Source: Phallusia mammillata
Taxonomy: Eukaryota
Length of the DNA stretch: 64,000 bases
Reading direction: 5' to 3'
NCBI GenBank assembly: GCA_965637545.1
Contig: OZ281494.1
Span: 12,524,001-12,588,000, forward strand
Part shown: piece by piece, positions 25,084-63,910 of the stretch
How positions within the stretch are numbered: position 1 is the first letter of the stretch
Layout of the letters: every line of letters begins with the position of its first letter
Notes under the pieces: generated by a model
Told to the model about the DNA's origin: nothing
Database searches by the model: none
The model's input: only the letters and a program-made list of their open reading frames with translations
Translations under genes and position numbers: made by a program

Positions 25084-28000
25084 ATGAACGCATCCACGCA
25101 ACCTTGTTTCATGCTTACTGGGTTTGAAAAGACTGAAAGACTTGAACTTGTAAATATCATAAAGCAGATGAATGGACTTTTCATATATGATCCTGCTGAC
25201 CAACAGGTAGGATATATATATATATAATAAGAACAGTTTTGTTAACTGATACATTGCTTGCAATGTTTTGGGGAAACTTTGTCAATAGGAACAGAAAATT
25301 GTAGGAAATACTGAATTACTGATGTTTGGTAGTGTTCACAGATTAATATTGTTTAACATTTTCCTTTTTGAGCAGAAAAATCAAAGCCAGTATATTTGTG
25401 TAAAACATAACGACGCTTGGACAAGTGCTATTGTCATCACCAGGTGTTAAGAACTCTTTTATTCATGATCAACATGTATTCAGATTATTGAAGCAGATTC
25501 CCTATTGATTTTTTGGTATTTGTAGGCATTTCTTCCTGGCTGTACTCATATGATTGCTAAGAAACCATGTAAAAGTTTAAAGTTTCTTTCTGCTCTTGCA
25601 ACGGGTAAGTACTATTTTGAATGTTTTTTTTGCTGAAATAAATCCACACAATGAAAAGATTTTGCTGCCAGTGTGCAGGGCATTCAATCAATAAATGTGT
25701 TGTCAAAAAGCTTTGTGTCAAAGTGAAAAATTACACAAATCTGAAATTTTAAATGATGTGGTAAATTAAAAATATTACCACAAAAATTTGCCTAAAATAT
25801 TTGCAAAAAAATGATCCTCATTTGTTTTTTATTGATTACCCATGCATATGCCCTTTTAGTCTTGTGTAAATACACCCTGTTTGCCCCCTGTCAAAGTAAC
25901 ATGCATATCCATTGCAAAATATGGCATGTTCTCAGTCTACACAAACATGAAGATTGGATTGGAGACAGACAGGGTCAACATTCTGTCAGCTGTGCAAATA
26001 AACCATAAGCATTCACTCAGCAGGCTGTAGGAAGTGCTTTAACATATTTGTCAGGTTTGGGTTCCTCAAAAAGTAGGTGGTGTATTTGAACCAGTGTAGG
26101 TATAGGGGCACTTCCCCAGAGGGAACACAGGTCTTATGTCCCTATATGATTTACATTAGTTGTTTGTTTGTTTTTTGGACAAAACTTTATAGGGGTAGAT
26201 AAGGTCAAGATGGTGTGCCAGTACATAAATTTGATAAAGTTTGATATTAAAAACATTTTTTTTTGTTAGAAATATGTTGGACATTTAATACTTATAGCTG
26301 TTTTAATAACTTTGCTAAGATGCATTGACTAACTAGAATTTATATTTCCTGTGTTACATTGCTAATTTGAAGAAATTTGTCTAAGCCACTAAAGAGGCTA
26401 TTTGTGATTGTTAATTTTTTTCCTTATCCTACATTAAAACAAACAATTATTTCAAAAAACTATGCCACCCTAGCAATGCTCCTATGGCAATAGATAACAC
26501 TCATTCCAGCAGAGTGACAAATCCCCTGTCTACAGAACAAGGTACTTCAACAGACAGGCTGTAGGGGTTGCTGAAAGGCAAGGTTAATCCCACCCTTGAA
26601 CCAAAACGCTTAACCATGGCGCTATACCCCATACTTGCCTCTGTCATGGCCAATTAGGATAACTTCCAGTGACTTACTGATGTTGGTTGGCAGGCAAATG
26701 GATTCTGAAACAGGAGTTTTTACGCCAGAGTTTAAAGTCTAAGTCTTGGTTGAATGAACAAGATTATGAATGGACAGATAAGGACAGCGGCACCAATGAC
26801 ATGGTTGAACTGTTTAAGGCAAGGGTTTGTGACTTTAGTTTGGTGTTGATGTTTGTAGTTGATTTATTTAAAGAAATAGACAAAATTACTATTGGACGAA
26901 GGGCATGTAAAAAGAGGTTGTTTGTCTTTGCAAAAACTTACACACATCAATTTCAGAATATAAGTTTGCTGCTAAATGTTAAAGTTGCTTGTTTTGGATT
27001 TAATGTAGCTTCGAGTTTTGCCTTGGTTGTTGTACACTTGTGCGAATTAACCGGTTTTTATCTCATTTTTCACGAACTTTGTGCATTTAGCAAAATCGTT
27101 TTTTTTTTTTTGTTTATTTGAAAGGAGATCAATTATGTGCCAAATATATATTACATATTTTTGTCCACAGTTTTAACTAGACAGGTTATAGTGTAACGTC
27201 GCCTTTCTAAAAAACAACAGCACAAAGGCGATTAACGCGAACGCCCATTTTTACATTACGTTTTACCTCCTAACTATTGTCGACGAATATGACAATTTAC
27301 TTTCTTCAGCGACAAATGCATCCATTTTATGTTATTCTAGTTTTTAAAATTCAAGGTTGTGTTTTCAGGCGCCAAGGCGTTGGCGAACCAAGATTGCTAC
27401 GCAGAACCAGAGGCCGCCATTTTGTGGCTGGAGAGTTGGTTTCGAAGTACCAAAGAAATATTTCTCCACTTACAAAAAGTAGGCAAATTGGTAATTCTTA
27501 TGCACTGTAAAATCTATGCCAAGTCTCCAACTTATTTATTCCATAATCCAGTTTCGCAGAACTAAAGAGCAATTTCCGTGTTTCTAACATTTTTTTCGGT
27601 TTATTTAGTATTCAGCATGAGTCTAGGAATTTCAGGATGACTTGACAACGCGTGAAAATGTTTTTGATCGCTTCATATCGTTTTTCTGTCCTTTGTTGAC
27701 AGCATTTATGTATTCCCAAAAGTTTAAGTTAATATTTTACGTCGGCTTGACACCAAGTTCAGCTGCAAACTCAAGCTTATGCAGAATGCCTGCGGCCAAC
27801 CAAAAAAGCAATTTCTGTTGTGTAACGGTAGAGTTAAAACACAGGTCAAGCGCAGGTCACTAGAGTTGCGTTTAAGTGACAAGGGGTTCGCTTTATAATC
27901 CCCTCACCTTAAAAGCCTCTTCGTGCTTTGAAACATAGCGCTGTGAGAAGGAAAGTGACTTCGATTTCAAATGTGCACGTTTTTATTCCATCCAAAACCG

Positions 28001-30901
28001 TGGACAAAAATGGTGGTTCCGCAATTGCCATTTGTGAACTTGCAACACGGCTGATTGGTTCTAAGGGTAACTGTTTTTGTTGAAGTACGATTTTAAATGC
28101 TGTTGACCAAACAGGGAGAGTTAGAAAACTTTTTTTGTGGAGATATAGAGCTTTTTTGCATTTGTTTTTTTGCACGTAGAGATAGTAGGTAGACACAAGA
28201 AAGGTTATGTTTTAATTTAGGAATGTAGAGCAAATAACAAGGAGTGGAATAAAACACCTGATAACTGGATTGACTCTGTATAGGTCCGGTAGAAGCATGT
28301 TTATTGTACTTTTCAGAGAAGAAATATTCTGTAAATGTTAACATTAACTTGCTGACTGACCCGGTATTTACCAAAAGTGTACTACAACCACCGCTAGACC
28401 ACTAAATATGTGTTCTGGTAATAGCCTTCAAACTCTCATAGAATCCATTGTTAGAAGCTTCGATTGCTAGAGCTCAACAGATCAAGTTAGTTTTTTCAGC
28501 TAATCCCACCCAAAGTCAATGACAGACCCAAGTAATCTTAAGCTGATGTGTTGTAAGATAACGGCACAGGCCTAGGTGCAGTTCCAAATGCATGAGTGCC
28601 TGTTTGACGAACCGTTGTGTTTTTCCTTAGGTTTTTATATTACAAAACTATTTAGGTTGCATGCATGTTTATAAAATCGATAATAATTTTTTGTATTTTG
28701 TAGTTTTATTGCTTGTCGCGGTTTTAAATCGTGACAGTCTTGCTATGCTTGTGTGCAGTTTGATATTTCAGTTTGTAAGGGTGTGATGTGTAGAAAGTGG
28801 TAAATTATTACGTTATATCAGCACCAATGTGTTTAATTGGATGCGTGAGAAAAACAGAAAATCGAATATTCCAAGTTATGATGATTTGCAGAAATCTATC
28901 TTGCTCTTCTATATTTTAGCCCTTGCTGTTTGTAGATTTTGTAGTGACTGACGGGGCCTTTACAGCTAATGGGCACATATAGGTTTTGAAACATTTTCGT
29001 TTAATGCTTTTGAATCCAATGCATTGCTTCTTTTTTATCACTTTGATATCACGGACGGTTAAAAACGATACACTCGATTGTGCCTTAACAAGCATTCGAG
29101 TAGGTAATGCACGTTTTACGGTCATGTGCTATTTCGAAGGCAATATGAAAACGTTTTCCAGGTTATTAATCTTTTAGGGATTGGAATTTAAAACCAGTTA
29201 TTTGCTGCCAAATTCTCAGGTTGAACTTGCCATGTCTAAATACCTTCCTACCGCTGTACAATACCCACTGTGACAAACCTCCAATATCACAGAACTTTGT
29301 AGCACCTGCTCGCCTAAATCCTACTTGAATCCGAATTGAGCCAGGGATAATCCGAAATCGACATTCTAGTACCCAGATGTCTGCTTGATGCCGAGCCTCG
29401 AGCTTTGGATCGCGTTGTAATTTTTCATCCAACCACTAAGTCCCTGTCAAACGTAGGCTTTGCTCAGCCAATACTTTGACCTCTCGTTAACCTACTCGTT
29501 AATCAAAGGCTGGTTTGTACTACACCGGTTCGGCCGCAGCATTCTTGTTTTAGGTCAATTTCGACTTATGTTGCTGTGTGTGGTTTTCCTGTCTGGTCTT
29601 TGCGTGCAATCGTTTGTACATTTTTGTTTTACTGTCTTGACGAAGGCCGCCTGCATAGAATGTCGAAGCAATGCAGCTGCCAAAAAGAAATATTATAAGT
29701 GTTACAGTATTAGTTTGTTGGTTATGTTCTTTTTACATTTTCGGCATTTTTAGCAGTGGAAAATCATCATGAGTGGTTTGAAAATATTATTCAGAGTAAA
29801 CCCGTTCTCATTGGTCCGAGAGCAACCAATCATAAAGTATGGATCAAAGTTCAAATATTTCTTGGGATGTTTTCCGATAACGATATTAGCGCTCTGTAGT
29901 ATTACATCATCAGTGGCCTGGATTCGAGTCATGTCATATTGAACCAAACACACTTTTGAGGTGAAGTGTAAACTTGTCCCATCGTTTCTTATCGTATCTT
30001 GTTGGCGTTTACTTGATGTTACTTCGTAGTGGTACATGAATGTAACATACACTCTTGTCTGGTTGTTACGTGTAAGTTATGCATCAGCAACATTTTATGG
30101 CCAGCTTCGAAAAACTCATCTGTTCTTTGACAAGTATATTTTAAACTTTTTTTGTTTTGGTTTTGGCTTACAATTTGACAAAATAGTTTTTTTGCCGAAC
30201 AGACAGTATAAACGATCGCCATGTAGAAAATATTTGAAATGTTATGCTTGGAAATACTGTATAGGACTGTTTCATTACAAACATTTTAATTTTTTGTGTC
30301 TTGTTTCTTTTTCATCTGAAATGGTTAACCATATTACAAGAGTTTGAAGCTAACTAATTGTGAATAGACACCTTTTAAATGTGACTATTATTTACAAAAA
30401 TGATACAAAGAAAACCGTTTTTAAACGTTTTAATTTTATGTATCAGCTGGATTTAAATTCAGCAATTTTAATTTCACCTTAAAATTATTACAATTTTTTT
30501 AAATGATTTATTTTGTTAACCAGGTCGAATTGTTCAGTAGTCAAATTGCAAGATGCCAACGTCGATATTTTTCGATCACAGGTTGTTGGAAACTGGCGGA
30601 GGCTCTGCGAACCAAGTACAAAACAGCACTTCAGAGTCTTACACTCACATACTCGTTCATCCAAGTACGTCATTTGTTACGTCAGACTTGTGACACGATC
30701 ATTTAAATCTAGAATTCTACATGTAATGTTGAACCAGTGTGGCAAACACTGTTAGTCTGCCACAGTATAATGGCTAAATGTTTTTGCGTATATTTTCTTA
30801 TGAGACCCTTTTTCACAGGACTAACAAAGAATGTGCAGCGATTCCACAACCGGGGAATTCCCTGTCTAATCTATGAATATTTGGCGCAGTATTTGATCAA
30901 G
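25084..30901 (+). CDS. SLF1: SLF1 (ANKRD32/BRCTx)-like, exons 1-6 encoding tandem BRCT domains
   Basis: Exons 25084-25206, 25526-25604, 26694-26818 (or 26824), 27369-27478, 30582-30664, 30819-30901, in phase. FMLTGFEKTE, CTHMIAKKPCKSLKFLSALATGKWIL, WLNEQDYEW, APRRWR, FCGWRV, LLETGGG, YTHIL, YEYLAQYLIK track the SLF1 N-terminal BRCT pair as I recall it. Ends in an open phase-0 donor with no stop. Confidence 0.85.
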
Positions 30902-33900
30902 GTAAATGGAGTTTTTATTCAAATGGCAGTCATTCTTTTTTCCTGGAACAGAATGTAAATCATTTTCTGCTGAGACCCCATGCCATGATTTGTGGCTGTA
31001 GAATTTAGTTTTTGCGGGAGGTAGTTTACTTGCAAAGCTGTTGTAAAAGGCAATTGAAATTATGTTGCAGTTGCTATTGCGACAACCGTTTTACACTCAA
31101 ATGCATATGTGAACCTAACGGTTGTTTTTTTTTGTAACATGCGTCTGAAAGTCATAGCGTACCCAGCTGTTCCAGTGCTATGGATCAAAAGAATCAGTTG
31201 GCATTTTGTAAATGTCAAGGAAAAACAACGTTTCACATGCGGTAATCCCCCGATAAGTTAGAGTTGTTAGTTTAAATACCACCGTGGAGAAATTCTTGCT
31301 AGTCATAACTGACTACTAAATGTCCAGTGGTAGTTGTAGAGTTTTACTAAATAACGTAAATTAAAAATGCACATTAGAATTTTCTTCAAACTGCTTATTG
31401 CGTAATAAAGTAAATGCCATGACAACCGGTTGGTAGTGGAAACGCCGTTAGACCTGACCACGTGATGAATAATTTACTGGCGGGTATTTATCGACAATAT
31501 TCCGTTAAATAATTTAACGTCACCTTTTTACGACCTATCCCGTTCGATCTGGTTTGTTTAACTCTAATGTACGCAACTTTTTGTCTTGTATTTATGGAGT
31601 GCCATTTTTTGGCTCTTATGAGTGCCCAAAATGGTATGTGGACTCGAAACTTTTTCATTATGATATCTTATTTTTTTAATTGTGGGGTTCTTACTAATGT
31701 TTTCAGATATTTAACTCACGAGAATGCTTGCTTGTCCTTTTTACGCATTAATAAGAACCATTGCATCTACAAACAAATCTTTTCCAATTTTGAAATAACA
31801 ACGGTCCTGCAGAAATTTCGTTAACAACAACTGCTTTAATGCGACTTTGTTTTGGGGCAATCTCGAGTTTTGGCATCAGTCCTGTTCTGTTTAGTGTCGA
31901 GATATTGTTGTCGCCAGATGGCGCACAGGATAACTTTTTAAATTCAATTGATTTGGATCAATTGTTGTAGCAAGGGGGTTGAAAGTGATCCTCAAACAAC
32001 CCTTTGTGGTTTTAAACAAAATTAGTTACATTGTCTCAAACACCTACACGTCGATATAAATAATAATTTAAATCGACAGAGAGATTAAATTAAGTTACAA
32101 TATAAACTCTTTCAGTTTAAAACTTCAAGAAATAATACCTGAAATGAAGAGACTGCACTTAGGCAGGCATCAGAGCCGAACTTGAATTCATTGGTTGCAT
32201 ATCCAACTTTGATTTGCTCAGTTAAATGGGAAGAAAATGATAGAAACAGAATGTTTTCCCATTACATCATTACTTAGAGAGAGCTGTAGTCACAATACAG
32301 TACCACAACACCAGTTTCCATTACACTTCTTACATAATGGCGCGAAACTTACAATTGGCGGCATGTAGCTCGTCTAGACCAAGATACGTGACACTGCTGA
32401 ATGCCTGACCCGTCGATCAGTTTGAAAACTCACTGATCAAGTTTCAATTAAGGCAGATCCACAGACGAGTTTATTAGCAGTCGCTTAAAACGTGCTTTGG
32501 CTGTTATTTTTAATTAAACTCACAACGACTGGTCGTGTTATGGTGGCCAAACTGGTCTTTTAACTCGTTTGTTGTTTTTATTGTGTGGCTGTTTACTGCA
32601 CTCCTTATGCCGTCAAAAATCTGAATTTGCTCAGTCAAAATCCGGGAAATCCCCGAATTTGCGACTATCTAAACCTTTGAGTTGACAGAACGGTCACGTG
32701 ACCTGTCAACGACTCGGGGTCATAAATCAAAGCTTTCCACCACTTCCAATTCGCCGCAATGTCGCGGTCGTTCTTCACGGGGATTAACTTCCCCTATTGT
32801 CCATGATGTCAACACCCGAATTTTGTACTTTTTGTTGTTGCCCCGATGGCGGCTTGAAAAGGGTGTGGGTTTTGGCTCGAATTTGATTGTCGGAACAAAT
32901 TAAACCCGGGTTCTGGATTTACTGAGATTTTTACCATTTTAGAAATATACATTGGTTAGGTTTTAATGTAGTTCTGTCAAATATAACGCCCTGAAAAAAA
33001 AACTGAATGTTTTGAATGTTTTCTGAAAAGCGATCTATAGTATTGGTACATTAGCATAGAATCGTCAAGCTCTAAAGGTTGTCCAATCAATTGACCCACA
33101 TTAAGTTTAGCACACCGATTTGTGAATGTTGGCAACTTTTTATTCACTTTACATGTATATAGTACATCTTATATTTAGTGTGGAAATCCGTACCTAAAAA
33201 TTTAAATTTAATATCTTCGTGCAACAGTTAAAAGTTGGTTAAAATTCAGGTTTATTCAACAAAAAAATCATTTTTTTATCCACGTAGAACAAAATATCAG
33301 TTACGATGCTACAATTTAATAAATCAAGTTAAACGTTCATTAACTTCACTTTGTAGAACTTTATTTACTCGAGACGCCATTTTATCGGCTTTTAAAGAAC
33401 TGTAATATTTTTGGCGTTTGTTCGATATATGTTCACCAGCTCTTGATTTTTTCCACTTTTTGAACAATAACCCTGGAAACCTCCTTCGAACTTTCAAATA
33501 GTTTATTCGCAACAAACACAATGAAATCGTTTATTTGATAACAATAGGCGTGACACCGAGGCAAGTATTTAAAGAAGGATAATTTGAAAATTAAGTATGT
33601 CCCAGCCGACTTTAATAAAGTTAATTTGTTTTACCGATTTAAAGCATTATTTCTATTGCTCCGTCAGTTTAAACCTAACACCTCACTATAAAATGATATT
33701 ATTGCATGTTAGAATTTACGATTTACTGTCACTTATCCAACCACCTATTTGCCAGCACTTAAGTTTTATTCATAACACATCAGTTATCCTATGATTATCA
33801 TTTTTGCGCCGTGAAAAAACAATTTAAGCTATCACATAAACACTTTTAGTTTTACACACATAATTTTGGCGATTGATTTAGTTAATTATCCGTGTATACC

Positions 33901-36900
33901 TCTCAATAATACTGTACAACATAACAAAACCTTGATATGTTTTCCAAGAAAATGTGTTTCACCACTGCTTTGGAGAAATATTGGCTAGTTTCTCTCCACA
34001 TTTTTTTGGTGAATTGGTTGGGTACCGAGTGTGTCTTTGAATGTTGAGACGGATTGACGTCAATTTAGGGAAATGTATTCGCTTTGACAGACACAGATGA
34101 CAATAACGAAACGGCAATTGATTTTAAAAAAACTATGTGACATCTGTAAGCTGCAGACAGTGCATACTGTTTCGGCCTATAAGGTCCCATCAGTGCAGCT
34201 GGTGACAAGACATAAGCCGTGTTGGCTAGTGTGATCATCTAACGGAACTTCAGTTTGCTGGGACTATGTTTTTCACCCTAACACATTACACACTTTTATT
34301 TGAGATCTAATTTGTAGAGGGCAAGAAGCATTGCTAAAGCTGCAGTACTCGCAACATTCGTTAGTGGGGCTTGAGCAGTATTCACTTAAGCACAGCTCGT
34401 ACTGCTATACAACACTTATCTAAGTCATGTTCCGCTTAAAACCACCAGATAAGCAAGCAAAAGGAGCTGTACGCAGAAGTTTGCGGTTTGATTGCGACTC
34501 ACCGCTAAATGTAGTTTGCCTTCATGTTACAACTCCCATTTGTTTAAAGTGTTCTCTGGGAGAAATACAGACGTTTCATCGATCTGTTGTTTTTCTTTAA
34601 ATTTGCACCGACTCCTAAATGATGTTTGTTGTGTCTGTTGTTAAACCCGCCAGTCGTTTGCACGTCATAATACTCATCGATCAATCGTCGAATAGCTCGA
34701 AACAAAATGGCTGACTCTTCAAGGAAGTACCAGCACTGTGTGGTCTCCCTTACAATGCAATGGAAACTGTGCTTTAATAGTTTCAAAACGCTAACCCTTT
34801 TTATCCGCTTTCGGAAGAGGCTTCCACTACTTCTTGCAGTTTGTTGTTGGAATCTTTTCTGCATTTCTTGCCTAAATAAACCTGTGTTTGTTAGTTAGTA
34901 GATAGTCGGTACACCGATTAGATCAAAACAAATACTCTTGACAAGTTATGCTTTGAATATTCACTACAGTGATGAATTCTTTCAGGGTTTAAAGTGGAGA
35001 ATTAGATGTTGTCAATGTAATCCATGTTACATCTCTGATTTAGGACATCTGTGTTGTAGCTTGAAGTCTTGTGTTTTGGTTAGATTGTGCTTCGTGTCCG
35101 TTTGGTTTCATTTGGCAGCTATATTACCGGTATTAACAAGTGGAAAGTATCAAACGGAACGGAATAAAAGCAAGCTTTTCCCAACCAGGTATACCCACCA
35201 AAAAAAAAAGATTTTATGGCAATTTTACGACGCAACGCCATTACATCACTTTTAATAAAGGTCACATAAGTTCGTCAATTCAGGCAACTACAAAACAATT
35301 TCAACCTTTTCTGAAACCCCCGTGAACTTGTTTTGATTCAAAACCGGTAACAGTTGCTCGCTTGCGGTGTGCGCATGCGTCATAGGCTGTCACGGTTCGT
35401 TGATTTTCACTTCAAGGTCGCCCGCCCTGAACCAGCTGGTTGTAACACAGGCATGGATGCATGTCCGTGAGTCTATTGTCCAGGAAACGGGTTTCCACGC
35501 TTCGCTCATTGGGTTTTGGGATCTTGTGTGGCAAGAAATGTGAATAATTTATGTTTGTTTGTTATTTACTTTTTAAATCAATTTGTCGATGTGTTTACGC
35601 TGTTCAGGATACCAATGCTTCCAACCTAAAGAGTTTTCCTGCCACGAAGCACAGCCTTTTTGCCCGTCAGTCGTGCACAATTCTAAGAAATGTGTAAAAC
35701 TTTTGCTTTTTGTAAAGCGGCAAAGTTTGTTGAATTAATGAATATACTTGTGTGTCTAACTCTGTACGTCGAACTGTAAAGTGGAGACGGCGATCAGGCT
35801 GTCCAAACATTAACATATAATATGGTAAACGCTCGAAAAACGCATTTAGCAGTTGGATTCGAACCCACAACTACAACTTTGGCTACATCGCGCTTCTCGC
35901 AGACCTGATGTTCAGAGGTATTTTTCGGGTAACGTTCAAACCAGTCCTCCTTTCACTTTTCTCACAACACTGCGTCGATTGTTGCATCCTACTCAGACCA
36001 ATAATCATTTCGACAATAGAAAACTCATTGCCAATACCGCAGTCGCCACACAACGGTTCACACTCCTTTCTACACAGTGGCTTATAAGGGGTGAGTGAAT
36101 CGATGTCGATTTTGCGAGTAACTGATTTCCGATAACCGCTCTTGACCTGCCATGATCTGAAACTGTAGTCTAGCCACCCTGGTCAATTTACTTTTCAAAA
36201 ATTTATCTGTAGGAGAGTAGATTTCTGATGTGATACACCGTTTATAGGTTAGTAGATAGGGTACTTGTTGCATTTTAGAGGTATTTTTTAGAGCTATGTG
36301 AATGAAATGAGTAATATTTGACTTGGGGGTGACTTTGTGAAACAAATCGGATCGACCAGGTTTCAATTAACAAGCGCGTCGATTTTACAATACTGACCTA
36401 TTTGTGTTTGTCTTTGACGTCGTTTGGATTTATAACCTAAGTTACTTTAGTCACTCGCAGCAAATGTTTTGTTTTGAGTACTTCGATAACAAAGAAATCA
36501 GATACTTCCATACAAGATAACAATCGTTTACCATTCTCAAGAAACCAAAAGTAACGTTTTTAATTTTTACTACATTTCTTGATGAAATATTTCATGTTGT
36601 AATTGTTATTGGTGGTAAGAGACATTGCTTGTGAATCCTAGTGCCGCCATTTTATGTCTTGTTTCCTGGGTCACATCGTGGATGGTGCAGCATTTGACCT
36701 ATCATATCATTTGCGTAAGATTTTACAATGCACAAAGCAAATTTAAACACAGCTAAGTGCTAGGAATGAGACTGTAACAATGTTTTTACTTTACTTTGTG
36801 CAAGAGACATATTACTAATTCACGCAGTGTGTTTGTGTGGTTTTTATTTTTGTGTTAAAAGGCAAACTAAATAATGAACTAATGTAAATAAAACTTTATT

Positions 36901-36948
36901 TTTGGAATACATTCTTTTTATTAGAACGTTTATAGGATTCGTATAGAT

Positions 36949-48612: not shown

Positions 48613-48764
48613 TTTTGGTTTGTTAACCTTTAAGTAATTGTAACGGCTGAAAAAGGCGGTTTATTAAGGTAAAAAAGCGAGCACGGACATGAAGAGTTTT
48701 CTGACAATTCTCTTTACTGCGATTTAACTTTAAAAAACACTGTGTTTTCCCACTTTTTGCATGA

Positions 48765-48859
48765 TGACTCATTATTTCACGCACTGCAAATTCGCCAGTG
48801 TAGTTTTTTAGTGTAGACTGTAGTAGCGCAATGACGTCATCCGGCTCCTATTGACGTCA
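48765..48859. promoter_or_regulatory. Candidate serpin A promoter: AP-1 site plus two CRE palindromes
   Basis: TGACTCA 48765-48771; TGACGTCA 48832-48839 and 48852-48859, 150-250 nt upstream of the ATG. Confidence 0.35.
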
Positions 48860-54000: not shown

Positions 54001-55333
54001 TCAAACTGCAAATGTTTTCTGTTTTCTTAAAACGATAAAAAGTAGTTAAACGACGGAAAATTGCTTTAGCCCGATCTCTAAAGTCAAAATAGAAATGTGG
54101 AAAAATAACAAAAAAAAGAAATAACAGCAGACATGTGGGCGGTAGGACCAGACGTTTATACATCCAACTAGAATAACCTAACTGAATAAACAACGCTTCC
54201 GTTTTATGCAAACGCCATAGGAAACTTTGGAAACACTGTTTACAGTTTACACAATTCAAGAGGAGGTTTTACGTTTGTCGGCATGCTCACCTGGTCTCAG
54301 CATAGCCAGTGCTGTATACATAGATAGTGGCGATACGGCTGTGTTGCCTGGCAACTGGTCAGCTGCCATGCTGTTCATGAGGTCACAGGCGAAGTCTTGA
54401 ACTGATTTAGCGGCTGGCAATGTGATTGGTCGTCTTTTTACGACTGTTTCTGGCTTTTGCTGATGTTGGTGTCCTGGTATCACCTGGGAAAAAATGTTTT
54501 TAGTTTTGATGTTAACGAAAAGTTTTTAAATTTGGATTATAGACTAAAAAGTTTTTAGTTTTAATACAAAATTGTGTTAGCTGCGTCTCTGGTTGTTATT
54601 CATTGTCAATGCTAAGGAGTGCACTTTTTCTTATCTTTGATCTTTGCGAAATTATGCGAAAAGCTAAATTAAGCATTTGGCTAATGTGTGGTGTCTAGGC
54701 TAAGTTGTATTAAATATTTAGATACTCGTGCAGCGATACAGGATCTTGTAGACTAAACACTGAACGTGTTTACGTCCTATCTTATATTTAGATTTTATTC
54801 AAAAGGAGCATGAAATTGAATTGACTGTAATGTCTAAAATCAATTTTCGATCGATTTAAAATAGCTTTTATGGAGTAGAGCTAAAAATTCCGCATGTCAT
54901 AAATGTCCGCGAATCGATTCCATTACACATGTGTATAAATAAGCGTAACATGTCATGTCAGCAAATTCTCCTTACCTGTGGGTCGGTGCTGTAGTCGTAG
55001 AGGTCGTAACCTAGTAAACAAACCACGTGATAAAATTTTTGCCAGTCCACTATAATGCAATGCCATTCAAATTTGAACATGGAATAATCGCGAACTAATA
55101 CCGAGATTGGCTAAAACAAAATTAAAATATAAAAACAAATATGGCAGCTCTAAGAATGTAAGTTATATTATTCAATCACTTGTTCTTACTAGTTTTTCTT
55201 GTAAAAAGGCAACTAGCATTTCTTGAAATCTTATTGTAATTTACTTACCACCTTCGGTGTACAAAGTCTCGTAGTCGAATGCGTTGACGAAGGAAAAGAC
55301 TGTACAGAAAATTGTGAGATGTTTCCAGTCCAT
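51083..55333 (-). CDS. Secreted serpin B, 8 exons, about 447 aa, predicted P1-P1' Arg-Ser, acidic Tyr-rich N-terminal extension
   Basis: Exons 55333-55249, 55010-54976, 54483-54291, 53845-53653, 53230-53056, 52815-52650, 51857-51738, 51459-51083, in phase. Signal peptide MDWKHLTIFCTVFSFVNA. NTAVSPLSM, ANRIY, LILVNALYMKAPW..KF, LPKF, hinge/RCL AEDGVEAAAATSIGIMTRSA, INKPFMYFIRH. AATAAA (-) at about 50759. Confidence 0.93.
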
Positions 55334-58300
55334 TCTTCTTGAAATTTGCAGCAAAAATCTGGTTATAAGACTAAATAATCTACAAATGTATTCTGCAAAA
55401 ATATAGCATGGTTAGGTTTAGGTTAGACTGTGGAATAATTCTAATCTTATAAAATCTTAACCTTGTTCCCCTGAACTGTTGGATTTTCATTTCAAAACAT
55501 TAATTTTTATTAGAAAACTTTAACCACAAAGCTTCAAAACTGTTTTAATTTTTTTTTCAATCCTGCTCAGATAAAAACACGATGTCAGGACTTGACTTTT
55601 CAAGTGACAATGGCACTGTTTAGAAAAATGTCAACGCAACAAAAAATGTTTCGTCAAACTGCCCGCGAAAATCAATAAATTGGCTGCAAAATATTTCCAG
55701 ATATATGCAGTCACGCATGGGCCAGAGTTAAGAGAGAAAATTCACGTCTCGCGAATCCGATACCCACCCTCTTGAAACCTTTTCACGCCTTCCGAGGGTT
55801 TACATCCGAATCAGATGCGATTCAAGCATCAGGCATTTAAGCACCCAATAATTTAGGCAATGAAGCTACGGAAATACGTACTTTGCTGGCCGCCAATTCA
55901 ACTTTACATTCAATAGGTTTGTTTTACAATACCTGTCTCTACCCATGATTTGTCAAAATAAACTATATTTGGCTTCGTTTCATGTTCGTTTCCACGAACT
56001 GTGGTGTATTGAATCGGGTTGCATGTCCCATGCTACAACGCCTAACCCCAAGCTGACTTTAATGAACTTTTGCTACTGTGCAGAAGTAGGTCACTTTGAA
56101 CTGCACGTGTGCTAAAATTCCCTATATTTTCTTGTAGGATTAATATTTCTAACTTAAGTTGTAAAATTGTCCAGTTGTTTTTCCTTTTCTTTTACACACA
56201 GCAACTTTTCTTCTATACGGTAGACCGTTACCACTTTAAGGTTGTTGGTCAAAACGCAACCGTTAATTTAGTATTTTAGTTGGTAGCATAAGACGCAAAC
56301 CACTCAAAAATTCAAAAGTCCAGTAGTGTACAATTTCCATTTTAACATCTTGCTCTCCTGTCTGTCTGACTGATTTTAATGGTTGCAAAATTCTTCTACG
56401 TTTGTAACAAAATGTTCGCTATTTATATTATCCAGTTGCTGATTTTTTAGGTTAAAAAATGTCGGATTAAGATGTTCTCCACACGCTACATCGTAATTGC
56501 CGCCGTACAGACCACACACCTCTTAATAACGACCACCGCAGTTCGCAATGTACGCAACGTTTTTAAGTGGCCCAAGGTGATTTCCTTATTGTCATCTTTA
56601 TCTCTGCTTACGAGTAATCAACAACCGAACGAGCGCGATTCTCGGTGTTGATGGTTTAAGTCTTAAGTTGACCTTGCTGCTTTTATTCTGCAAGTAACTG
56701 CGGTTTACCAACATTAAAACAATTCAATCGGTAAACTCATCGTTTATAAAACTTTATACGCTTTATAAAACTACCTGACGTTGCCTTAAGATTGCATTCA
56801 ATACTGAAAATCTACAACCTTGTTTGTGCGAGCAAGGACAGATAAAACAAAATATTTTCCATACTTTGCGGCAATATTTTTCGTCTTAAATTAGACTAGA
56901 AGAGCGGTTTATCTTCAGAAATCAAATTTATCCGTTGATATGTTTACACCTCGTCGGATATACCGGATATTGAACGAATCAACAGGCGTTAATCTTCGAA
57001 CACACAAACACATTGAAAGGCTTTTGACATACCTTGGGCAAATTTTGTGGCTTTTGTTTCGAGATAACTGCATAGGAATTTCATTTTCACGTAAATGCGA
57101 TCGTTTCATACAAACATGTCTGTGAGTTAAGCGCGCGAAGAATTTGACATTTTTGCAATTTGAGTTTACAGTTCTACAATCGTTACCAAAAATGCAAAAA
57201 CTATGAACGAAAGAACCTGCCAACAAAACAAAAATACCACTGAAGTCATAATGCAAAAGCCCATCCTTTGAGGCGACGTTTTTAAACCAACCACAAAAAT
57301 TACAAAACTTCCAAGATTTTCCAAGACAACATTTTAAAGAACCTTCGCCTTTACCTACCTGATGCAAATTTGACTGGTTGGTTTACACTGTGCCCCTGTC
57401 TTGAATAGCAGTAATACATTTTCCTTACCGCCACTCCCCCTCTCTACCTTTCAACTAAACCGCTTAGGCAAAACACCTGTGCCTTCTTAACAGTCAATCA
57501 AATTAATCCCAAAATTACATCCTAATCTTACAAATTGGCAAAAAAAACGTTAGTAGTTATCGCGTTGCGAAGAATACCTACAAATTGACCGTTTAGTGCG
57601 CTACTGGGCGATATAATGACTTTAATTTGATTGTCACTAGACCAATTTGGCGAAACTACAACTTTGTGACATAAAACTGCCGTGTACCAGCACCTGTTAA
57701 ATTTTTGGACGGTTTTCAAACTTTCAAAAATCATCCCAAAATTCACAAAGTTGTTCAAAAATCACCACAATTTTAAAAACATTTTGATTTTAAGGACCGT
57801 AGCAACTAGCAACGTTTACATTTGACAAACAACGACATGAAAGCAAGCTGCATGAAACTCATTTGAAACCAACTTTATTCGCATACAAATTGATAACCAT
57901 CCCAACAAAAACTCCTTCAAGTTTAAGCGCCGACTTTTTTGTTGTCTCAACCCTCTTGTCTGTTGCAGTTTATATGGCTCAGCTTATCATACCACCCCAC
58001 GCCGCTTTTGCGTCACCAGTCAACACTAGAAAATCTCGACAAATAACTTAAATTTCATTCACTCCCACACGCCGAGCTCCTATGAAGTTCCCTCGAAACC
58101 TGGTGAAGTTCTCCCTGCGTCATGAGGCCTTGTGACGTCACATTGGGTTTGCAAACAACTTTTATGAATGAAGACATGCGCGGTGGCTGACGTCTTGACG
58201 ATAGCGGGACACATTTTTCGCTTCCTAATCTTTGCTGAATTTGTCTAACTTATCTTGTGCACCTTAAGCAAAGGCCTGACCTTCCTACAATCAAGATAAG

Positions 58301-60304
58301 ACACGAAATACTTTACTCTAATACACAAGTGTTGACATTGTAAGACCGGTTTCTAAGTCGGATTCAAGAACAGCTTTTCAGAATTTTTAAATATTTATAG
58401 TACACTTATCTTACAGTGACGTCATAAGTTTGCTATGATGTCACAGACGGGCAAAATCCAATACTTTTTTAAACTGAAAGAAAGTAAACCTTATTAGAAC
58501 AATAACAGCACGAAGTTATTAAAACCTATTGCGGTCATAAATGTCACTATATTCTAAGAAACCTCCCACGGAGTTCATTACGGATCGTAAGGGGAAATGT
58601 GACCTTAAGTACCCCGCTTTATGACGCATTGTATTCTCACGGTTAGCGTCAAAGTCTAAAATAAATTTGAATTCACACGGTTATCTTTCCGCGTTTGAAG
58701 CACTATACAGTTGAAATAGAGGTTTTCTTTAGGTTTTTGATTTTTTTATTGCTGTAATTCTTTGGGGAGATGTAGTGCAAATTTGCTAACCGGCTATTTT
58801 TGTATAAATTGAGATGGCTTTATTGTTTTCCTTCCAGCGATGTGCCATATTTTCGTTCTGTCTTCAATTCGGCCGAGATTGGGCATTTTTATAGTTTTTC
58901 GGTTTCGTTGCAAAAGCCGAAAAACTACCCTTTAAATAACATAGCGTTACATGAGTGGTTTGTAGGAATTCCAGCACAACTCTTTTTTACTAAATTGTTT
59001 TACGTAGTCCCTGTCTATGCAACACCAAGACGATTCTAAAAATACGCACAAAATAATATAATATAGTTGTAAGTCGTAGCTACAGTTATGATATTTCGGA
59101 ATATAAAAACAAATGTACGCTGTCAAAACATCTACATAAAAATATCCTAATTTAATTATATCTGTCCACATACACTCAAGCATTTTTTTAGCTAGATGCA
59201 TAGCTCATGTCAATGCTCTGTTTTAAAAGCATAACTATGCCTACTGTCTAAAGTTTTTCCAACATCGGTTTACAATTTAGACTACTCTGTGATGGTCGCG
59301 TAAACATGCTGGACACAAACAGAGAACCAGGGCAATGACGTGGCACTCTGTCTACATCACGTGTACGACACTTATTTATTGCACCCAGTGTTATAGGAAC
59401 AAACTGTTTACAAGCTAATGCAATTGCTCGTGGGTAGAAATGCTAAGTTGGGACCACCATGCGTTCACGCTTGTGATCACCTTGATGATGGCAGCATAGA
59501 CCTAAGGAGGAAACCGTTTTCACCCACAAAACAACAGACAGACTTAGTTTACCAGCTGTTGTTTTTGGCCCAACACTTGATCTCCCGTAAGTAGCATACC
59601 AAGATAAAACGATGCTATCTGTCACCAGCACATATGGCGGCCTGAACTTAAAACCTCCTGGGAGGCGGACGCATATGGATGATATTGATTTTAAGCTGTC
59701 GATTTCTGCCGACTTTTTACGGCTGTTTATCATCTTTTACCACACTAGATGCGTCTGTTAAATTTCAATTCAAGTTTGACCTTTTTAAGTTCAAGTAGAA
59801 GACTTGTGCACAAAACCCGCGTGACTTTACGAAAACATATTTGTGCGTTTCAAGTTTAAGTTTTAAAATTGGTTGGATTTTGCTTTATTTATTTGCTACA
59901 GATTGCTTTTTAATTAATTTAATATTTGCTCTGATGTACATTTGAGTCCTGGAGACAAATTCTTATCTACACAGACAATCCTAGCCCGGCGTTTTAAATG
60001 TTTAACATTTTTTTCGAAACAGTGGTGGTGCGTTGCTAATTAATGTGTACATGCGTATGTGGAGCGCCAGGCCTCACAGAAGATGTCGTCATAAGTGTTT
60101 ATGTCGTCTTGAGATGCGTTTTTGTGTCTTGTCGATACGTTTACGAAGCCCTATGCCTTGTAGTATATAGAAGAGTAGTGGTTAAATTAAGTTGGTTCTT
60201 TGTATGTGCAACCGTCTTTTTCTTTCCCCAAAATTGATTCCATACAAATCTTGACTTCGTTTTGACTTGATTCAACATACCAAATAATCACGCTATTTTT
60301 TTAG

Positions 60305-63300
60305 GATCCACCTCCTTCTATTGGCGAGTATAGCGCATTTCCATCTGCGACCCAAGCATCTGCACCCGCTCCCACCTTGTCTGTTGACACAAAGTGTTTT
60401 GTTCAACTGAGTAAATGTGACGATCTTTTAAGTCCAAACTCCTACAACTCTCTTATTTCGGGGAAAAGATCCCAGAAGGAAGCATTCCAATCTGCAGAGA
60501 AAAAAGAGCAACTGGAAAAGATTTCCCCACACCAGAATGAGGACCGCCTATCTCCGAATAGCGAAATCTACCCCAGTCAGGAGATACTTACTCCGCTAAG
60601 AAAACCCACATTACAAATTAAACGCCTGGAGGAAACTTTTGGGGACGGAGAAATTGAACCACCTGTCCGTGTTATCCCAGTTGACCCCGATAGTTCGTCG
60701 GATTCTGAAAAAAGTTTAGATTCGCCAAATTCACCGAGTGACAAGAAAGAGGGGATGACGTCATATATGAAAATGACGTCATCTGACGCGACGCCTAATC
60801 TGTTTGAGAAGCTGCGTTCGACACATCCGACGGTTGAGGTTTCGAATCCCGTCCCAGCCGAGACTTCGTCGGCAATTCGTCAGCTTTTTCCCGAACCAAT
60901 TGAGACAAAATTCGAAATCCTAGCTGATGACGTGCACATGACGTACCGCCATGTCACAACTAAGCCAACACGCATGTCCGAAATCACCGTTCCTGCTGCG
61001 CTGAAGGCCAAACACGAACAAATTAAACGGTTTTTAAAGTTATTGAGGTAATAAATAATTTTAGAAGTTGTCAACTAAAAACGTTACGGTTGACCGCACA
61101 AAGCTCGTTATGCTAAACCGCTTTGAATTTTAAACACAAATTTCCACAGCCCCGTTACTGACAAGAGAAAGCCAAAAAATGATGACGTCGTAATCGATTG
61201 TGACGCAATTGATGACGAAGAAGTTGCCTCCCGATTTGGTAAGACGGAAATGTCGATGGTGGAAAGGTTTGCAGAAGCGGAGCACACAAGATCAGTCATC
61301 TTTATCTGTAACAACTTCCTTTCAGCTGAATCTTATCCTCCACCTGACCTTATCTATCTGCTCATGAAAAAATATATCCTGGTAAAAAAAACTTTTTTAA
61401 ATAAACTTCTCAATCAGGATTCATATATTTTAACAAATAACGACTGATATTATTTGTGCAACACAGGTGACCAAGACGATTGGCAAACTTGTTTTTAACG
61501 CATTGTCTACAGTCAAATTATAATCGCCTAAATTAAAACAACCTGACTAACAGCATACAACACTGCAAAACAAAACTATAGTGTCGCGACAAACTTTTCT
61601 AACCTATGAAGATTTTTCAGCAGCGCTAATGCAACTTTGCCAAGAAACTGGCTTCAAACCCTCATTCATCTAAATATTTTGCTCCTTAGGATTCCAACGA
61701 CCTCAATGAATCTTTTCAGGCACTGGCCTTCCTTCACACAACCTTACTTCTTCACCCACCCTCTGCACCCTACATTCGTCATGATGACGTATATCAAAAG
61801 GTATGTGCATGACGTCATCATGTCTTTCTGATGTCTGCAGACTAGACACGCCCTTAGACTATATTGTTTGCATTTTTGATTTCAGTCTCGTTTTTGGCAT
61901 CGGAGTTTGATAAATCTAATTGAAATAGACGTAGTGATTCAACGTTATAACAACAGCGGTTTATTCACTGCCCAGGGAGTAATGAGTAGGTGGTTATTAA
62001 ACCTAGTTGAAACCTGCACTCGTATTGTTCCACCGGTCAAGCACGTCCGGTCGTATGTCGTGATTCATTTTCATTGAATAGAACTTTTTACGCCCAAAAG
62101 AGTGGGTTTGTTTCTTTTTCTTGAAAAATGATACATCGCTGTATGTTGCCGTTTTTCAGATTGAAATAAAAGCAACTGCGTTCGTTTGTTTTTACTATTG
62201 CGCACTTGCTAAAATCCAAAACTGTGTGACTTTAAATGAACGTTAGGGTCATTATAGCATTTTAGATGTACTGCATATATTTTTGCGTGATATTTGACAC
62301 TAAATCTTCACAAATTATACACAGGGACATAGGAGTTTGACTGCAAAAAGAAAATGCTTCTTGCCACTTAGAGCAATTTTAAACGAGTAAAAATTAAAAG
62401 CAAGTGTAATTTTAACTGTTTAGTTATCAGATTTACTAATTGCACGCGGTTTTTTAAAGGCATTGGGTATGTCATCTTCAACTGATTCAAGTCTCCTCAG
62501 CGCCACCAAGTTGAACCTGCACGGGTCAAAGTTCATATGGAATCAGCCGCGGGAAGAATCTCATGAGTGGAGCTTTGTTTCTACGACCATAAAGTATAAA
62601 CAGTTCTTCTTTCCCTGACGCAGAAAATAAACTTACGACTTTTATATGTTTAGACAAGCTATAAACTGCAGTGATCCTAAGCGTCGGAAGATAGCAGTAA
62701 GTTTGTTTTCGTATCTCGCCAACGTTTTGGAACAGGACAGTCGATTATTACGTCAAATGCTATGGCCGCGGTCTCGATCTGTCCGTCAGTCGACTGCTTT
62801 GCGAGAATTGTTGAATTTGTACCGTGACGTCATCGATATCACGGCTCCTACGACACCATCGTTAGAGGTAACTTCAAATATGCTGTTGTAGTTTTTTCTA
62901 TCTCAAGTTGCCTGTTGTCGTTGCAGAATTTTACCCAAGCTGAAGATGACGATATTATTGTACAAGACATCCCCGACGATGATTTTGAGGATAAAACACA
63001 AGGTATAATAAGTAAGGTGTATATTTAGTTTTATGAGGAACACATCTAGTGTATTTTCTTGCACCTCAGGAAGTATCCGCCCTAAACGTATTTGGCGATT
63101 GATTACTCTTCTCATTAACCGTTAAACATCAGTTAGTGTACACAAAATGGAAATTTTTTGTTCGTTTACCTGTTATATCAGAATGTCGTCTAAAAACATT
63201 CATGCAACCTGTTGATAAATTAAAATTATCGCCACGTCAACAACCTATACAAGCTGTCGTCATTGCGTCTGGATAGATAACGTAGCTTCAGGAGATGATT

Positions 63301-63910
63301 TTGAGGACACAAGTTCACTGTCCACGGAAACTTGCTTTAGCTTGGGAAAGGTAGTGAATGCGATTTGCGACATGGTCTTACAAGGTAACTGTTTATCCTC
63401 TTTGTGGTTTCGGGCCCGCTGTTTGCAATTTTTTCATTAAATTACTTTTTGTTACGTATCAATCGTTGCCAACTGCAAATCATTTGTTAACAAAGCTTAT
63501 CATGTAAAAAAGTTTTTTAGTCGTTTTCTGATACAAACACTGATTCGAACTGAAGGAGCAGAAACTTGCCATTTATGACTCATGTAGTTGTTTTCCAAGA
63601 TAAAATCTGTGCCTGTATTGTTTTACTGAATGTTGAACGCCTATACACATGTTTGTCACTTTTTTCAGTTAATTTAAATAAATGCTGCTTTACATAAAGG
63701 AAGTCGAGAAACATTTTATTTCAATTTATCTAGAAAACCCCGAATCTATCGACGTTATAATTCAGTGTTTGTCCGAATCGTTTAAGGAGGCGAACCCTTT
63801 AACCCTGGGTTGGTTATTTCGTGAACTTCAGCCGTTGATTTTCGTCCGCATGGCCCGTTTAATGTTGTATCAGATGTGTAAAGAAGAAAGGACACAATCC
63901 ACCCGAAATG
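60305..63910 (+). CDS. SLF1: SLF1/SIMC1-like, exons 7 onward: disordered linker + Nse5-like helical domain; continues past the window
   Basis: Exons 60305-61047, 61150-61381, 61690-61800, 62460-62593, 62654-62867, 62927-63002, about 63286-63384 (several in-frame acceptors), 63734-63910, in phase. YPPPDLIYLLMKKYIL-DSND..FLHTTLLLHPP resembles SLF1 YIPPVCVLHALLENVL..LSALLHLHPP as recalled. No ankyrin repeats are visible inside the window. Confidence 0.72.

What the first reader, a model, noticed from the sequence alone, without database searches (positions are those of the whole stretch)
25084..63910. SLF1 gene split by a 29.4-kb intron that hosts two antisense serpin genes
Seen: BRCT exon 6 ends YEYLAQYLIK|GT (30901, phase 0) with no stop. 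The next plausible + strand exon I found starts TTTTAG|DPPPSIGEY (60305, phase 0). The joined YLAQYLIKDPPPSIGEY matches the BRCT-terminal pattern I recall from TopBP1 (YIADYLMQESPPHVENY), and later exons supply the SLF1-type YxPP and LHPP helical motifs. All other introns modelled here are under about 3.2 kb. Inference: one SMC5/6 loader gene with a nested serpin pair and about 13 kb of extra non-coding DNA, likely mis-annotated as two genes.
Basis: partly seen in the sequence, partly recalled or inferred. Interest (0 to 1): 0.75.

Follow-up and report, generated by a model that had tools for sequence, protein, structure and literature searches.

The report
SLF1 gene hosting two serpin genes
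The DNA-repair gene SLF1 in this animal genome is one gene whose sixth intron, 29.4 kb long, holds two backward-facing serpin genes; such gene-within-gene layouts are common in animals, so this is a sound annotation point, not a surprise.

Summary
The observation and the main interpretation hold. The letters at both sites are as described.

RNA-derived contigs from 4 of 4 runs laid, from 4 studies, join six 5' exons. All four then run on past 30901 into 30 letters that occur once in the window and once in the genome, at 60306-60335. So 30902-60304 (29,403 nt) is one GT..AG, phase-0 intron of one transcript.

On the minus strand it holds two serpin genes (Pfam 119.7 and 117.1 bits). They are old paralogues, 44% identical in their last exons.

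The host looks like SLF1:
- Exons 2 and 3 have the human SLF1 tandem BRCT (8ir2) as best PDB hit, at collinear positions.
- An ankyrin domain lies just beyond the window. It aligns without gaps to the SLF1 ankyrin domain 8pef and keeps the H4K20me0 pocket residues.

Not shown: the exact 3' exon model, the Nse5-like fold, serpin expression, the age of the nesting and the "mis-annotated as two genes" guess.

Nested antisense genes are routine in animals. Unchecked AI notes of this scan report three more cases in this genome. Interest is low.

The parts
25023..25206 (+). SLF1-like exon 1 (5'UTR from at least 25023; ATG at 25084; start of BRCT1)
   Evidence: Contig pieces and the joint 25206|25526 in 4 of 4 runs. 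The peptide is MNASTQPCFMLTGFEKTERLELVNIIKQMNGLFIYDPADQQ. An in-frame stop lies just upstream of the ATG. This exon had no PDB hit of its own.
25526..25604 (+). Exon 2 (BRCT1 core, including the K56-equivalent lysine)
   Evidence: GT..AG joints in 4 of 4 runs. The best PDB hit is human SLF1 tBRCT 8ir2_A, E 0.001, chain 42-62, and the lysine aligns with K56.
26694..26818 (+). Exon 3 (end of BRCT1 and linker), followed by a GC..AG intron
   Evidence: Joint 26816/27367 with 4 ambiguous letters; shifting by +2 gives GC..AG. The best PDB hit is 8ir2_A, E 0.0035, chain 65-93.
27369..27478 (+). Exon 4 (APRRWR linker and start of BRCT2)
   Evidence: Joints in 4 of 4 runs; peptide. No PDB hit on its own.
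30582..30664 (+). Exon 5 (BRCT2)
   Evidence: Joints 27478|30582 and 30664|30819, both GT..AG, in 4 of 4 runs.
30819..30901 (+). Exon 6 (end of BRCT2, ...YEYLAQYLIK, phase 0)
   Evidence: Contig pieces end at 30901/30902, and a loose end runs on into the letters of 60306-60335 in 4 of 4 runs. No PDB hit on its own.
30902..60304 (+). Intron 6 of the SLF1-like gene: 29,403 nt, GT..AG, phase 0
   Evidence: Donor GTAAAT and acceptor TTTTTAG. It is spliced out in contigs of 4 of 4 runs. The partner 30-mer is unique in the window and in the genome. The window has no N.
43846..48404 (-). Serpin A, nested antisense (span supported by Pfam)
   Evidence: PF00079 on ORF pieces: 43846-44571 (119.7 bits, profile 210-370), 46049-46294, 47872-48123 and 48198-48404. 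Another piece at 47437-47634 (genome 12571437-12571634) matches profile 106-169.
51086..54525 (-). Serpin B, nested antisense (span supported by Pfam; the first exon may lie further upstream)
   Evidence: PF00079 on 51086-51490 (117.1 bits, profile 261-370), 52618-52815, 53652-53909 and 54259-54525. The piece 51580-51900 had no hit. It is 44% identical to serpin A over 111 aa of the last exon.
36939..37458 (.). MITE-like interspersed repeat inside intron 6
   Evidence: At least 39 copies at 89-99% identity on C1-C8, from 3,306 first-look candidates. The 25-nt terminal inverted repeats are 84% complementary.
60305..61047 (+). Exon 7 (long linker of low conservation; starts DPPPSIGEY)
   Evidence: The start is fixed by the RNA loose end. 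The donor at 61047 is inferred from frame and splice letters. 20 of 21 listed runs hold 96-100% of its sampled words. It found 0 relatives in 1.84 billion proteins.
61150..63910 (+). Exons 8-15 or 8-16 (helical region upstream of the ankyrin domain); exon borders are inferred, not seen in RNA
   Evidence: An open chain with no internal stop: 61150-61381, 61690-61800, 61886-61989 (or 61886-61978 plus 62424-62593), 62654-62867, 62927-63002, 63277-63350, 63700-63910. The gene continues past the window into L002 (= window 64001 onwards): 145-244, 536-611, 776-1061 and 1373-1545 (ankyrin repeats), 1735-1943, and 2158-2512 with the stop.

Best explanation
One protein-coding gene, an orthologue of SLF1 (the BRCT- and ankyrin-bearing, Nse5-like localisation factor of the SMC5/6 complex), starts at 25023 and runs past the window end to about window-equivalent 66512. 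Its sixth intron, 30902-60304 (29,403 nt), is removed as a single canonical GT..AG, phase-0 intron. The splice joins the end of the second BRCT repeat (...YLAQYLIK) to a long linker exon (DPPPSIGEY...). Inside that intron, on the opposite strand, lie two multi-exon serpin genes that are old paralogues of each other. There are also about 21 kb of non-coding DNA with a few short interspersed repeats. The intron is roughly ten times longer than any other in the gene simply because it is the host of nested genes.

Shown: the five upstream splices, the 30901 to 60305 junction, serpin identity and orientation.

Inferred: the 3' exon borders; that the same transcripts reach the ankyrin domain and the stop codon; that the protein reads phospho-RAD18 through its BRCT pair and H4K20me0 through its ankyrin domain as human SLF1 does; and that the serpins are independent expressed units.
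For: RNA evidence:
- One contig per run (3,941, 3,810, 2,650 and 1,496 nt) in 4 of 4 runs from 4 studies lies on six exon-sized pieces with five intron-sized skips. Four skips are GT..AG and one is compatible with GC..AG. Each contig then has a loose end at 30902 whose 30-letter consensus agrees fully.
- That 30-mer matches only 60306-60335 (+) in the window, with 0 expected by chance, and one place in the genome.
- Both exon edges are phase 0 with no stop.
- The two longest contigs carry 3,273 and 3,148 nt beyond 30901. That is enough for the modelled 2,964 or 3,123 nt of remaining coding sequence.

SLF1 identity:
- Exon 2 has 8ir2_A (human SLF1 tBRCT) as top hit of 6, at chain 42-62, with K aligned to K56.
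- Exon 3 has 8ir2_A as top hit of 20, at chain 65-93.
- The ankyrin ORF at L002:722-1096 aligns without gaps, query 40-100 to chain 4-64, to 8pef_A (SLF1 ankyrin domain) at 78.6 bits.
- The paper gives the construct as residues 802-934. With that numbering, E808, D838, W842, E847 and N850 all fall on E, D, W, E and N here (PMC11551741, passages read; peptide).
- The same paper describes SLF1 as an N-terminal tBRCT plus a C-terminal Nse5-like domain split by an ankyrin domain. Here helical-looking exons lie on both sides of the ankyrin exons.
- The last exon is single-copy in the genome.

Serpins.
Against: - The runs are labelled 'RNA?' (a guess) on record. That they are RNA rests on their contigs lacking introns.
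- Only 30 letters of each loose end are shown.
- Contigs drop rare variants, so a BRCT-only isoform or an isoform started internally is not excluded.
- Pfam found no BRCT in any single exon or ORF piece.
- Exons 1, 4, 6 and the last exon gave 0 PDB hits. Ankyrin exon 19 gave only generic ankyrin hits.
- 8pef_A ranks 26th of 392, behind designed and long multi-repeat ankyrin proteins. TONSL (5ja4_D, 75.5 bits) is nearly as good.
- Exon 7 has no detectable relative in 1.84 billion proteins.
- No full-length orthologue could be aligned.
Confidence: 0.93

Rival explanations
1. There are two separate genes: a short BRCT-only gene ending near 30.9 kb, and an ankyrin/helical gene starting near 60.3 kb. 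The joined form would be a rare read-through or an assembly chimera.
For: Reading through the exon 6 donor gives a stop after 18 codons, so a truncated product is possible. Contigs cannot show absence of minor forms (tool text).
Against: The joined form is the only form seen in 4 of 4 runs from 4 studies. The junction uses canonical GT and AG at both sides and keeps phase 0. The two sides share only one letter, so a 31-mer graph could not join them by accident. Exon 7 has an in-frame stop immediately upstream and no ATG-bearing extension. No contig lay on 30903-31019 (table 2 and table 8).
Confidence: 0.04
2. The genome is mis-assembled: the serpin block, or part of the 29.4 kb, was placed between exons 6 and 7 by error, and the true intron is short.
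For: None directly.
Against: The window has no N. It lies inside a 36.4-Mb contig. 54600-60290 and the flanks of the repeats match only themselves in the genome. The only repeats seen inside are 120-520 nt long, too short to cause a 29-kb mis-join in a long-contig assembly.
Confidence: 0.02
3. The host is not SLF1 but another BRCT- and ankyrin-bearing protein, such as a BARD1- or TONSL-like H4K20me0 reader.
For: The ankyrin exon scores almost equally against TONSL (75.5 bits) and SLF1 (78.6 bits). The pocket residues are shared by SLF1, TONSL and BARD1 according to PMC11551741.
Against: Two BRCT exons each pick human SLF1 tBRCT as their best PDB hit, ahead of PAXIP1, TopBP1 and BRCA1. The domain order is BRCT pair first and ankyrin near the C-terminus. 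From my own knowledge, not from a call, that order is the reverse of BARD1 (RING, ankyrin, then BRCT) and unlike TONSL (no BRCT). No RING, TPR or LRR piece was seen in the ORF lists.
Confidence: 0.04

Closest known systems
Human SLF1 (ANKRD32/BRCTD1), the Nse5-like SMC5/6 localisation factor; structures 8ir2/8ir4 (tBRCT) and 8pef (ankyrin domain)
   Same: It has an N-terminal BRCT pair. Exon-level best PDB hits go to 8ir2 at collinear positions 42-62 and 65-93, and the K56 equivalent is kept. It has a late ankyrin domain with an ungapped match to 8pef, and E808, D838, W842, E847 and N850 equivalents are kept. There is further sequence after the ankyrin domain, as expected for a split Nse5-like domain.
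   Different: The modelled protein is longer: 1,188 or 1,241 aa against 121 kDa for human SLF1 (PMC11551741). There is an extra loop between the second and third ankyrin repeats, split by an intron. The 247-aa linker exon has no detectable relative. The Nse5-like fold and the binding of RAD18, H4 and SLF2 were not tested.
Host/nested gene pairs in animal introns (for example 2mit in Drosophila timeless2 intron 11; mammalian host/nested pairs)
   Same: Guest genes lie wholly inside one host intron in the opposite orientation, and the host splices across them. The abstract of PMC3786989 states that intronic genes are about 6% of Drosophila genes. The abstract of PMC11694760 treats host/nested pairs as a general class. 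Both were seen only in the listing.
   Different: Here there are two guests, paralogous serpins, in an otherwise short-intron gene. Their expression, and any interplay with the host, is not shown.
Other nested arrangements noted by this scan in the same genome (SND1/LRRC4-like, RNF123 intron cluster, DOCK-D)
   Same: The layout is the same: antisense or mixed guest genes sit in the largest intron of a host.
   Different: They involve different hosts and guests. I did not re-test those notes, and the organism name comes only from them.

Membership tests
SLF1 (SMC5/6 localisation factor 1) | N-terminal tandem BRCT domain | tested here: met
   Exons 2 and 3 each have human SLF1 tBRCT 8ir2_A as best PDB hit (E 0.001 and 0.0035) at collinear chain positions 42-62 and 65-93. 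The second repeat (exons 4-6) is recognised only by eye. Exons 1, 4 and 6 gave 0 PDB hits, and Pfam saw no BRCT in single pieces.
SLF1 (SMC5/6 localisation factor 1) | [quoted passage not shown] | tested here: met
   K56 is aligned to a lysine in the printed alignment CKSLKF / CKSEKF. The T13 equivalent is read by eye as T12 in FMLTGF; no tool alignment covers it.
SLF1 (SMC5/6 localisation factor 1) | Ankyrin repeat domain with the H4K20me0 pocket (E808, D838, W842, E847, N850; also D881) | tested here: met
   The match to 8pef_A is ungapped, query 40-100 to chain 4-64. Taking chain 4 as residue 802, all five residues are kept as E, D, W, E, N (peptide). That offset is inferred: the construct covers 802-934 and the chain has 136 aa. 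D881 lies beyond the aligned exon and was not placed. The same pocket occurs in TONSL and BARD1, so it does not single out SLF1.
SLF1 (SMC5/6 localisation factor 1) | Nse5-like alpha-solenoid split by the ankyrin domain, which binds SLF2 (PMC9708086, passages) | tested here: inconclusive
   Coding exons lie on both sides of the ankyrin exons. No Pfam family matched five 3' pieces. The joined protein was not searched, by rule.
SLF1 (SMC5/6 localisation factor 1) | BRCT pair and ankyrin domain on one polypeptide | tested here: met
   The BRCT exons are joined to exon 7 in 4 of 4 runs.
Host/nested gene pair | The guest gene lies entirely within one intron of the host, and the host splices across it | tested here: met
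   The serpin pieces at 43846-48404 and 51086-54525 lie inside 30902-60304, which is removed in 4 of 4 runs.
Host/nested gene pair | The guest is an independently transcribed, intact gene | not tested
Pfam pieces cover profile positions 2-370 for both serpins without stops inside the pieces. Start codons, signal peptides and exon joins were not modelled.
Serpin (PF00079) | Match above Pfam's gathering score | tested here: met
   The last exons alone score 119.7 and 117.1 bits against a cut-off of 27.

The most novel reading that the evidence does not exclude
The nesting may be functional and old. Under this reading, the one long intron of the single-copy SLF1-type SMC5/6 loader is kept as a shelter for two antisense serpin genes whose transcription collides with host transcription, so that switching the serpins on lowers full-length SLF1 or favours a BRCT-only product ending just after exon 6. 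In addition, this protein carries acidic-flanked hydrophobic, SIM-like stretches (VVIDCDAIDDEE in exon 8, DDDIIVQDIPDDDFED in exon 13). It might therefore combine, in one polypeptide, the jobs that vertebrates split between SLF1 and SIMC1.
Probability: 0.07. Interest if true: 0.55.

Novelty: new member of a known kind. Interest (0 to 1): 0.2.

Why it matters
The main value is for annotation. Gene finders that cap intron length, or that break genes at embedded genes, would split this locus into a BRCT-only gene and an ankyrin/helical gene. That would lose the one architecture that identifies the SMC5/6 loader SLF1. The RNA junction fixes the structure.

It also documents an SLF1-type protein with both reader modules apparently intact outside the species where SLF1 has been studied. 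The tBRCT K56 pocket and the H4K20me0 ankyrin pocket are both kept. This is useful for comparative work on how SMC5/6 is targeted.

The gene-in-intron layout is not new biology in itself.

Tried and rejected
1. Relatives of the 248-aa exon 7 in the 1.84-billion-protein library: 0 hits at E <= 0.001, not even a self-hit. I therefore obtained no orthologue to align, and the "mis-annotation" claim could not be checked. I did not use the search for homologous proteins. Its length window (0.55-1.75 times the query) cannot reach a protein of about 1,200 aa from any single exon, and the operators asked to spare it.

2. Pfam on ten + strand ORF pieces: no BRCT, no ankyrin (those exons lie outside the pieces sent) and no Nse5-like family. 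Only sub-threshold chance hits appeared.

3. PDB sequence searches: 8 answered. SLF1 chains appeared in 3. There were 0 hits in 4, and generic ankyrin hits only in 1.

4. An automatic exon-chain script for the 3' half picked wrong frames and skipped exons, giving 2,277 nt. I rejected it for a hand-curated chain checked for frame and stops. That chain still has two equally valid variants: 61886-61989 joined directly to 62654, or 61886-61978 plus 62424-62593. It also has a 9-nt choice of donor at 63002 or 63011. PolyA-signal positions did not discriminate between variants.

5. A hidden gene in the 13-kb part of the intron: no coding-looking ORF, no Rfam family, and CpG observed/expected is about 1 throughout. 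There are three short interspersed repeats. The genome search scores only about 40 candidates per call, so rarer repeats may be missed.

6. Synteny, to date the nesting: not possible. No eukaryotic genome other than this one is within reach of the tools.

8. Supplementary files of the papers were not opened. Supplementary Figure S2 of PMC11551741 (an alignment of the SLF1, TONSL and BARD1 ankyrin domains) would bear on my residue mapping.

The joined (spliced) protein was never sent to any search, family scan or fold.
Full report
WHAT WAS CLAIMED. They would be separated by a 29.4-kb intron that hosts two antisense serpin genes.

THE LETTERS.
- The + strand reads ...TATTTGATCAAG|GTAAAT with the last exon base at 30901.
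- It reads ...TTTTTAG|GATCCACCTCC... with the first exon base at 60305.
- From the ATG at 25084, the six 5' exons give 603 nt (201 codons) with no stop, ending in phase 0.
- Reading through the donor meets a stop after 18 codons.
- The frame of exon 7 has a stop directly upstream of 60305.
- The window contains no N.

THE DECISIVE TEST.
- The look-up of sequencing runs, queried with exon 7, listed 21 runs of one organism. Of these, 20 hold 96-100% of the exon's sampled words, and they come from 6 studies.
- Most of these runs have 9-28 million letters of contigs against a 240-Mb genome. That fits transcriptomes, although the record only says "RNA?".
- I laid 4 of the 21 runs on window 25020-31019: X1, X3, X8 and X13, from studies P1-P4.
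- Each run gave exactly one contig (3,941, 3,810, 2,650 and 1,496 nt).
- Each contig lies on six pieces: 25023/25026/25086/25139-25206, 25526-25604, 26694-26818, 27369-27478, 30582-30664 and 30819-30901.
- Between the pieces are five skips of 319, 1,089, 550, 3,103 and 154 nt. Four are GT..AG. The third has a 4-letter ambiguity and becomes GC..AG when shifted by two.
- Intron-free contigs of this kind come from spliced RNA.
- At 30902 every contig runs on into letters that are not in the laid stretch. The 30-letter consensus is the same in all four runs, with agreement 1.
- That 30-mer occurs once in the window, at 60306-60335 on the + strand, with 0 expected by chance.
- It also occurs once in the whole genome, at the same place.
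- The one-letter offset arises because G follows 30901 and G also begins exon 7.
- The junction 30901|60305 therefore exists in RNA in 4 of 4 runs from 4 studies.
- No contig covered the first 118 nt of the intron.

THE HOST GENE.
- The window is G000:C1:12524001-12588000. I fetched the next 20 kb.
- Downstream of the window, the + strand carries ankyrin-repeat ORFs and a final ORF ending ...EQLKRFNEALGAT*.
- A hand-curated exon chain runs from 60305 to that stop and stays open in two variants, of 2,964 or 3,123 nt.
- The two longest contigs have 3,273 and 3,148 nt beyond the junction. They are therefore long enough to hold either variant.
- This part is inference: read laying allowed one call, so only the start of exon 7 is seen in RNA.
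- The modelled protein has 1,188 or 1,241 residues.

IDENTITY, TESTED EXON BY EXON.
- Exon 2 (26 aa) has human SLF1 tBRCT 8ir2_A as the best of 6 PDB hits. E is 0.001 and it covers chain 42-62, ahead of PAXIP1 and TopBP1. The printed alignment puts a lysine on K56.
- Exon 3 (41 aa) has 8ir2_A as the best of 20 hits. E is 0.0035 and it covers chain 65-93, ahead of BRCA1.
- The two matches are collinear and adjacent.
- PMC11551741 (passages read) names T13 and K56 as the phosphate-binding residues. It describes SLF1 as a tBRCT plus an Nse5-like domain split by an ankyrin domain.
- By eye, FMLTGF in exon 1 supplies the threonine.
- The first ankyrin ORF matches 8pef_A (SLF1 ankyrin domain, 136 aa) at 78.6 bits over query 40-100 and chain 4-64, so the match is ungapped.
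- With the paper's construct 802-934, I take chain 4 as residue 802. This offset is inferred.
- On that numbering, the K20-channel and H18-stacking residues E808, D838, W842, E847 and N850 fall on E, D, W, E and N of ...KGETLLH...ARDHAGWTPLSEACN....
- The last exon is single-copy in this genome.

RESULTS AGAINST THE SLF1 READING, OR EMPTY.
- Pfam saw nothing meaningful in ten + strand pieces.
- Exons 1, 4, 6 and the last exon gave no PDB hit.
- Ankyrin exon 19 gave only generic ankyrin hits.
- 8pef_A is 26th of 392 hits, behind designed and multi-repeat ankyrin proteins. TONSL is close behind it at 75.5 bits.
- Exon 7 has no relative among 1.84 billion representatives.

THE GUESTS.
- On the minus strand, Pfam Serpin matches four ORF pieces at 43846-48404 and four at 51086-54525.
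- The last exons score 119.7 and 117.1 bits. One further piece, 51580-51900, had no hit.
- A genome-wide scan adds the middle pieces and shows at least 72 serpin matches. These include an intronless tandem cluster on contig C8.
- The two nested serpins are 44% identical over 111 aa of their last exons and have different exon layouts. They are therefore old paralogues, not a fresh duplication.
- Their expression was not tested.

THE REST OF THE INTRON.
- 30902-43845 (12.9 kb), 48405-51085 and 54526-60304 show no coding-looking ORF of 75 aa or more.
- The 24000-64000 scan found no Rfam family.
- 54600-60290 is unique in the genome.
- Three short interspersed repeats were seen:
  - a 520-nt MITE-like element with 25-nt inverted ends at 36939-37458;
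  - a repeat of about 120 nt at about 34146-34266;
  - a repeat of about 147 nt at about 38881-39028.

HOW IT WORKS.
- Shown: the host is transcribed across 41 kb or more and spliced so that intron 6, guests included, is removed.
- Inferred: the product is a modular adaptor. By analogy with human SLF1 (papers), it would bind a phosphorylated partner through BRCT1, read newly replicated chromatin through the ankyrin domain, and carry SMC5/6 through an Nse5-like domain.
- Inferred: the serpins are ordinary independent genes that happen to sit in the intron.

COMPARISON AND NOVELTY.
- Nested, mostly antisense, protein-coding genes in introns are a well-known class. The abstracts of PMC3786989 and PMC11694760 were seen only in the listing.
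- Earlier notes of this scan are AI notes that I did not check. They report three more nested arrangements in this same genome and call it a sea squirt.
- The finding is thus a correct and useful gene model: a new member of known kinds, and not surprising.

VERDICT. Confidence is 0.93 and interest is 0.2.

Noticed in passing
window 26819-27368: Intron 3 of the SLF1-like gene is best read as a GC..AG intron (donor GCAAGG). The RNA joint has a 4-letter ambiguity, and no GT..AG placement exists inside it.
   Followed up: partly
window 36939-37458: A 520-nt MITE-like element with 25-nt terminal inverted repeats. It has at least 39 copies at 89-99% identity on contigs C1-C8, from 3,306 first-look candidates, so it was probably active recently.
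   Followed up: partly
window about 34146-34266 and about 38881-39028: Two more short interspersed repeats, about 120 nt at 80-97% identity and about 147 nt at 91-99% identity. Each has at least 39 scored copies across the genome.
   Followed up: no
G000:C8:2263028-2310179: A tandem cluster of 12 full-length, apparently intronless serpin ORFs (376-423 aa, 349-400 bits), plus broken copies. This contrasts with the multi-exon nested pair. Further intron-bearing clusters lie on C4 near 6.46-6.51 Mb and on C8 near 17.9 and 19.27 Mb.
   Followed up: no
window 61150-61381 and 62927-63002: Hydrophobic runs flanked by acidic residues in exon translations (VVIDCDAIDDEE; DDDIIVQDIPDDDFED). These are SIM-like, as another note on this window says. 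Not tested.
   Followed up: no
L002:1062-1372 (= window-equivalent 65062-65372): In the model, the loop between the second and third ankyrin repeats is long (...LPVATRSVATPSG / SEGEVSSRIPALEIDLL...) and is interrupted by an intron. This is an insertion relative to a plain ankyrin stack. The D881-equivalent residue could not be placed.
   Followed up: no
window 9223-10233 (-), 11916-16976 (-); L003:4327-4662 (+): Neighbouring genes seen in ORF lists by eye only: an Aurora-type kinase ORF, a kinase with RCC1-like repeats (NEK8/9-like), and a RanBP1-domain-like exon downstream of the SLF1-like gene. These names are recalled from motifs, not tested.
   Followed up: no
window 60305-61048: The 248-aa linker exon found no protein at all among 1.84 billion cluster representatives, not even itself. 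Either this species' proteome is absent from that library or the exon is not in any predicted protein there.
   Followed up: no
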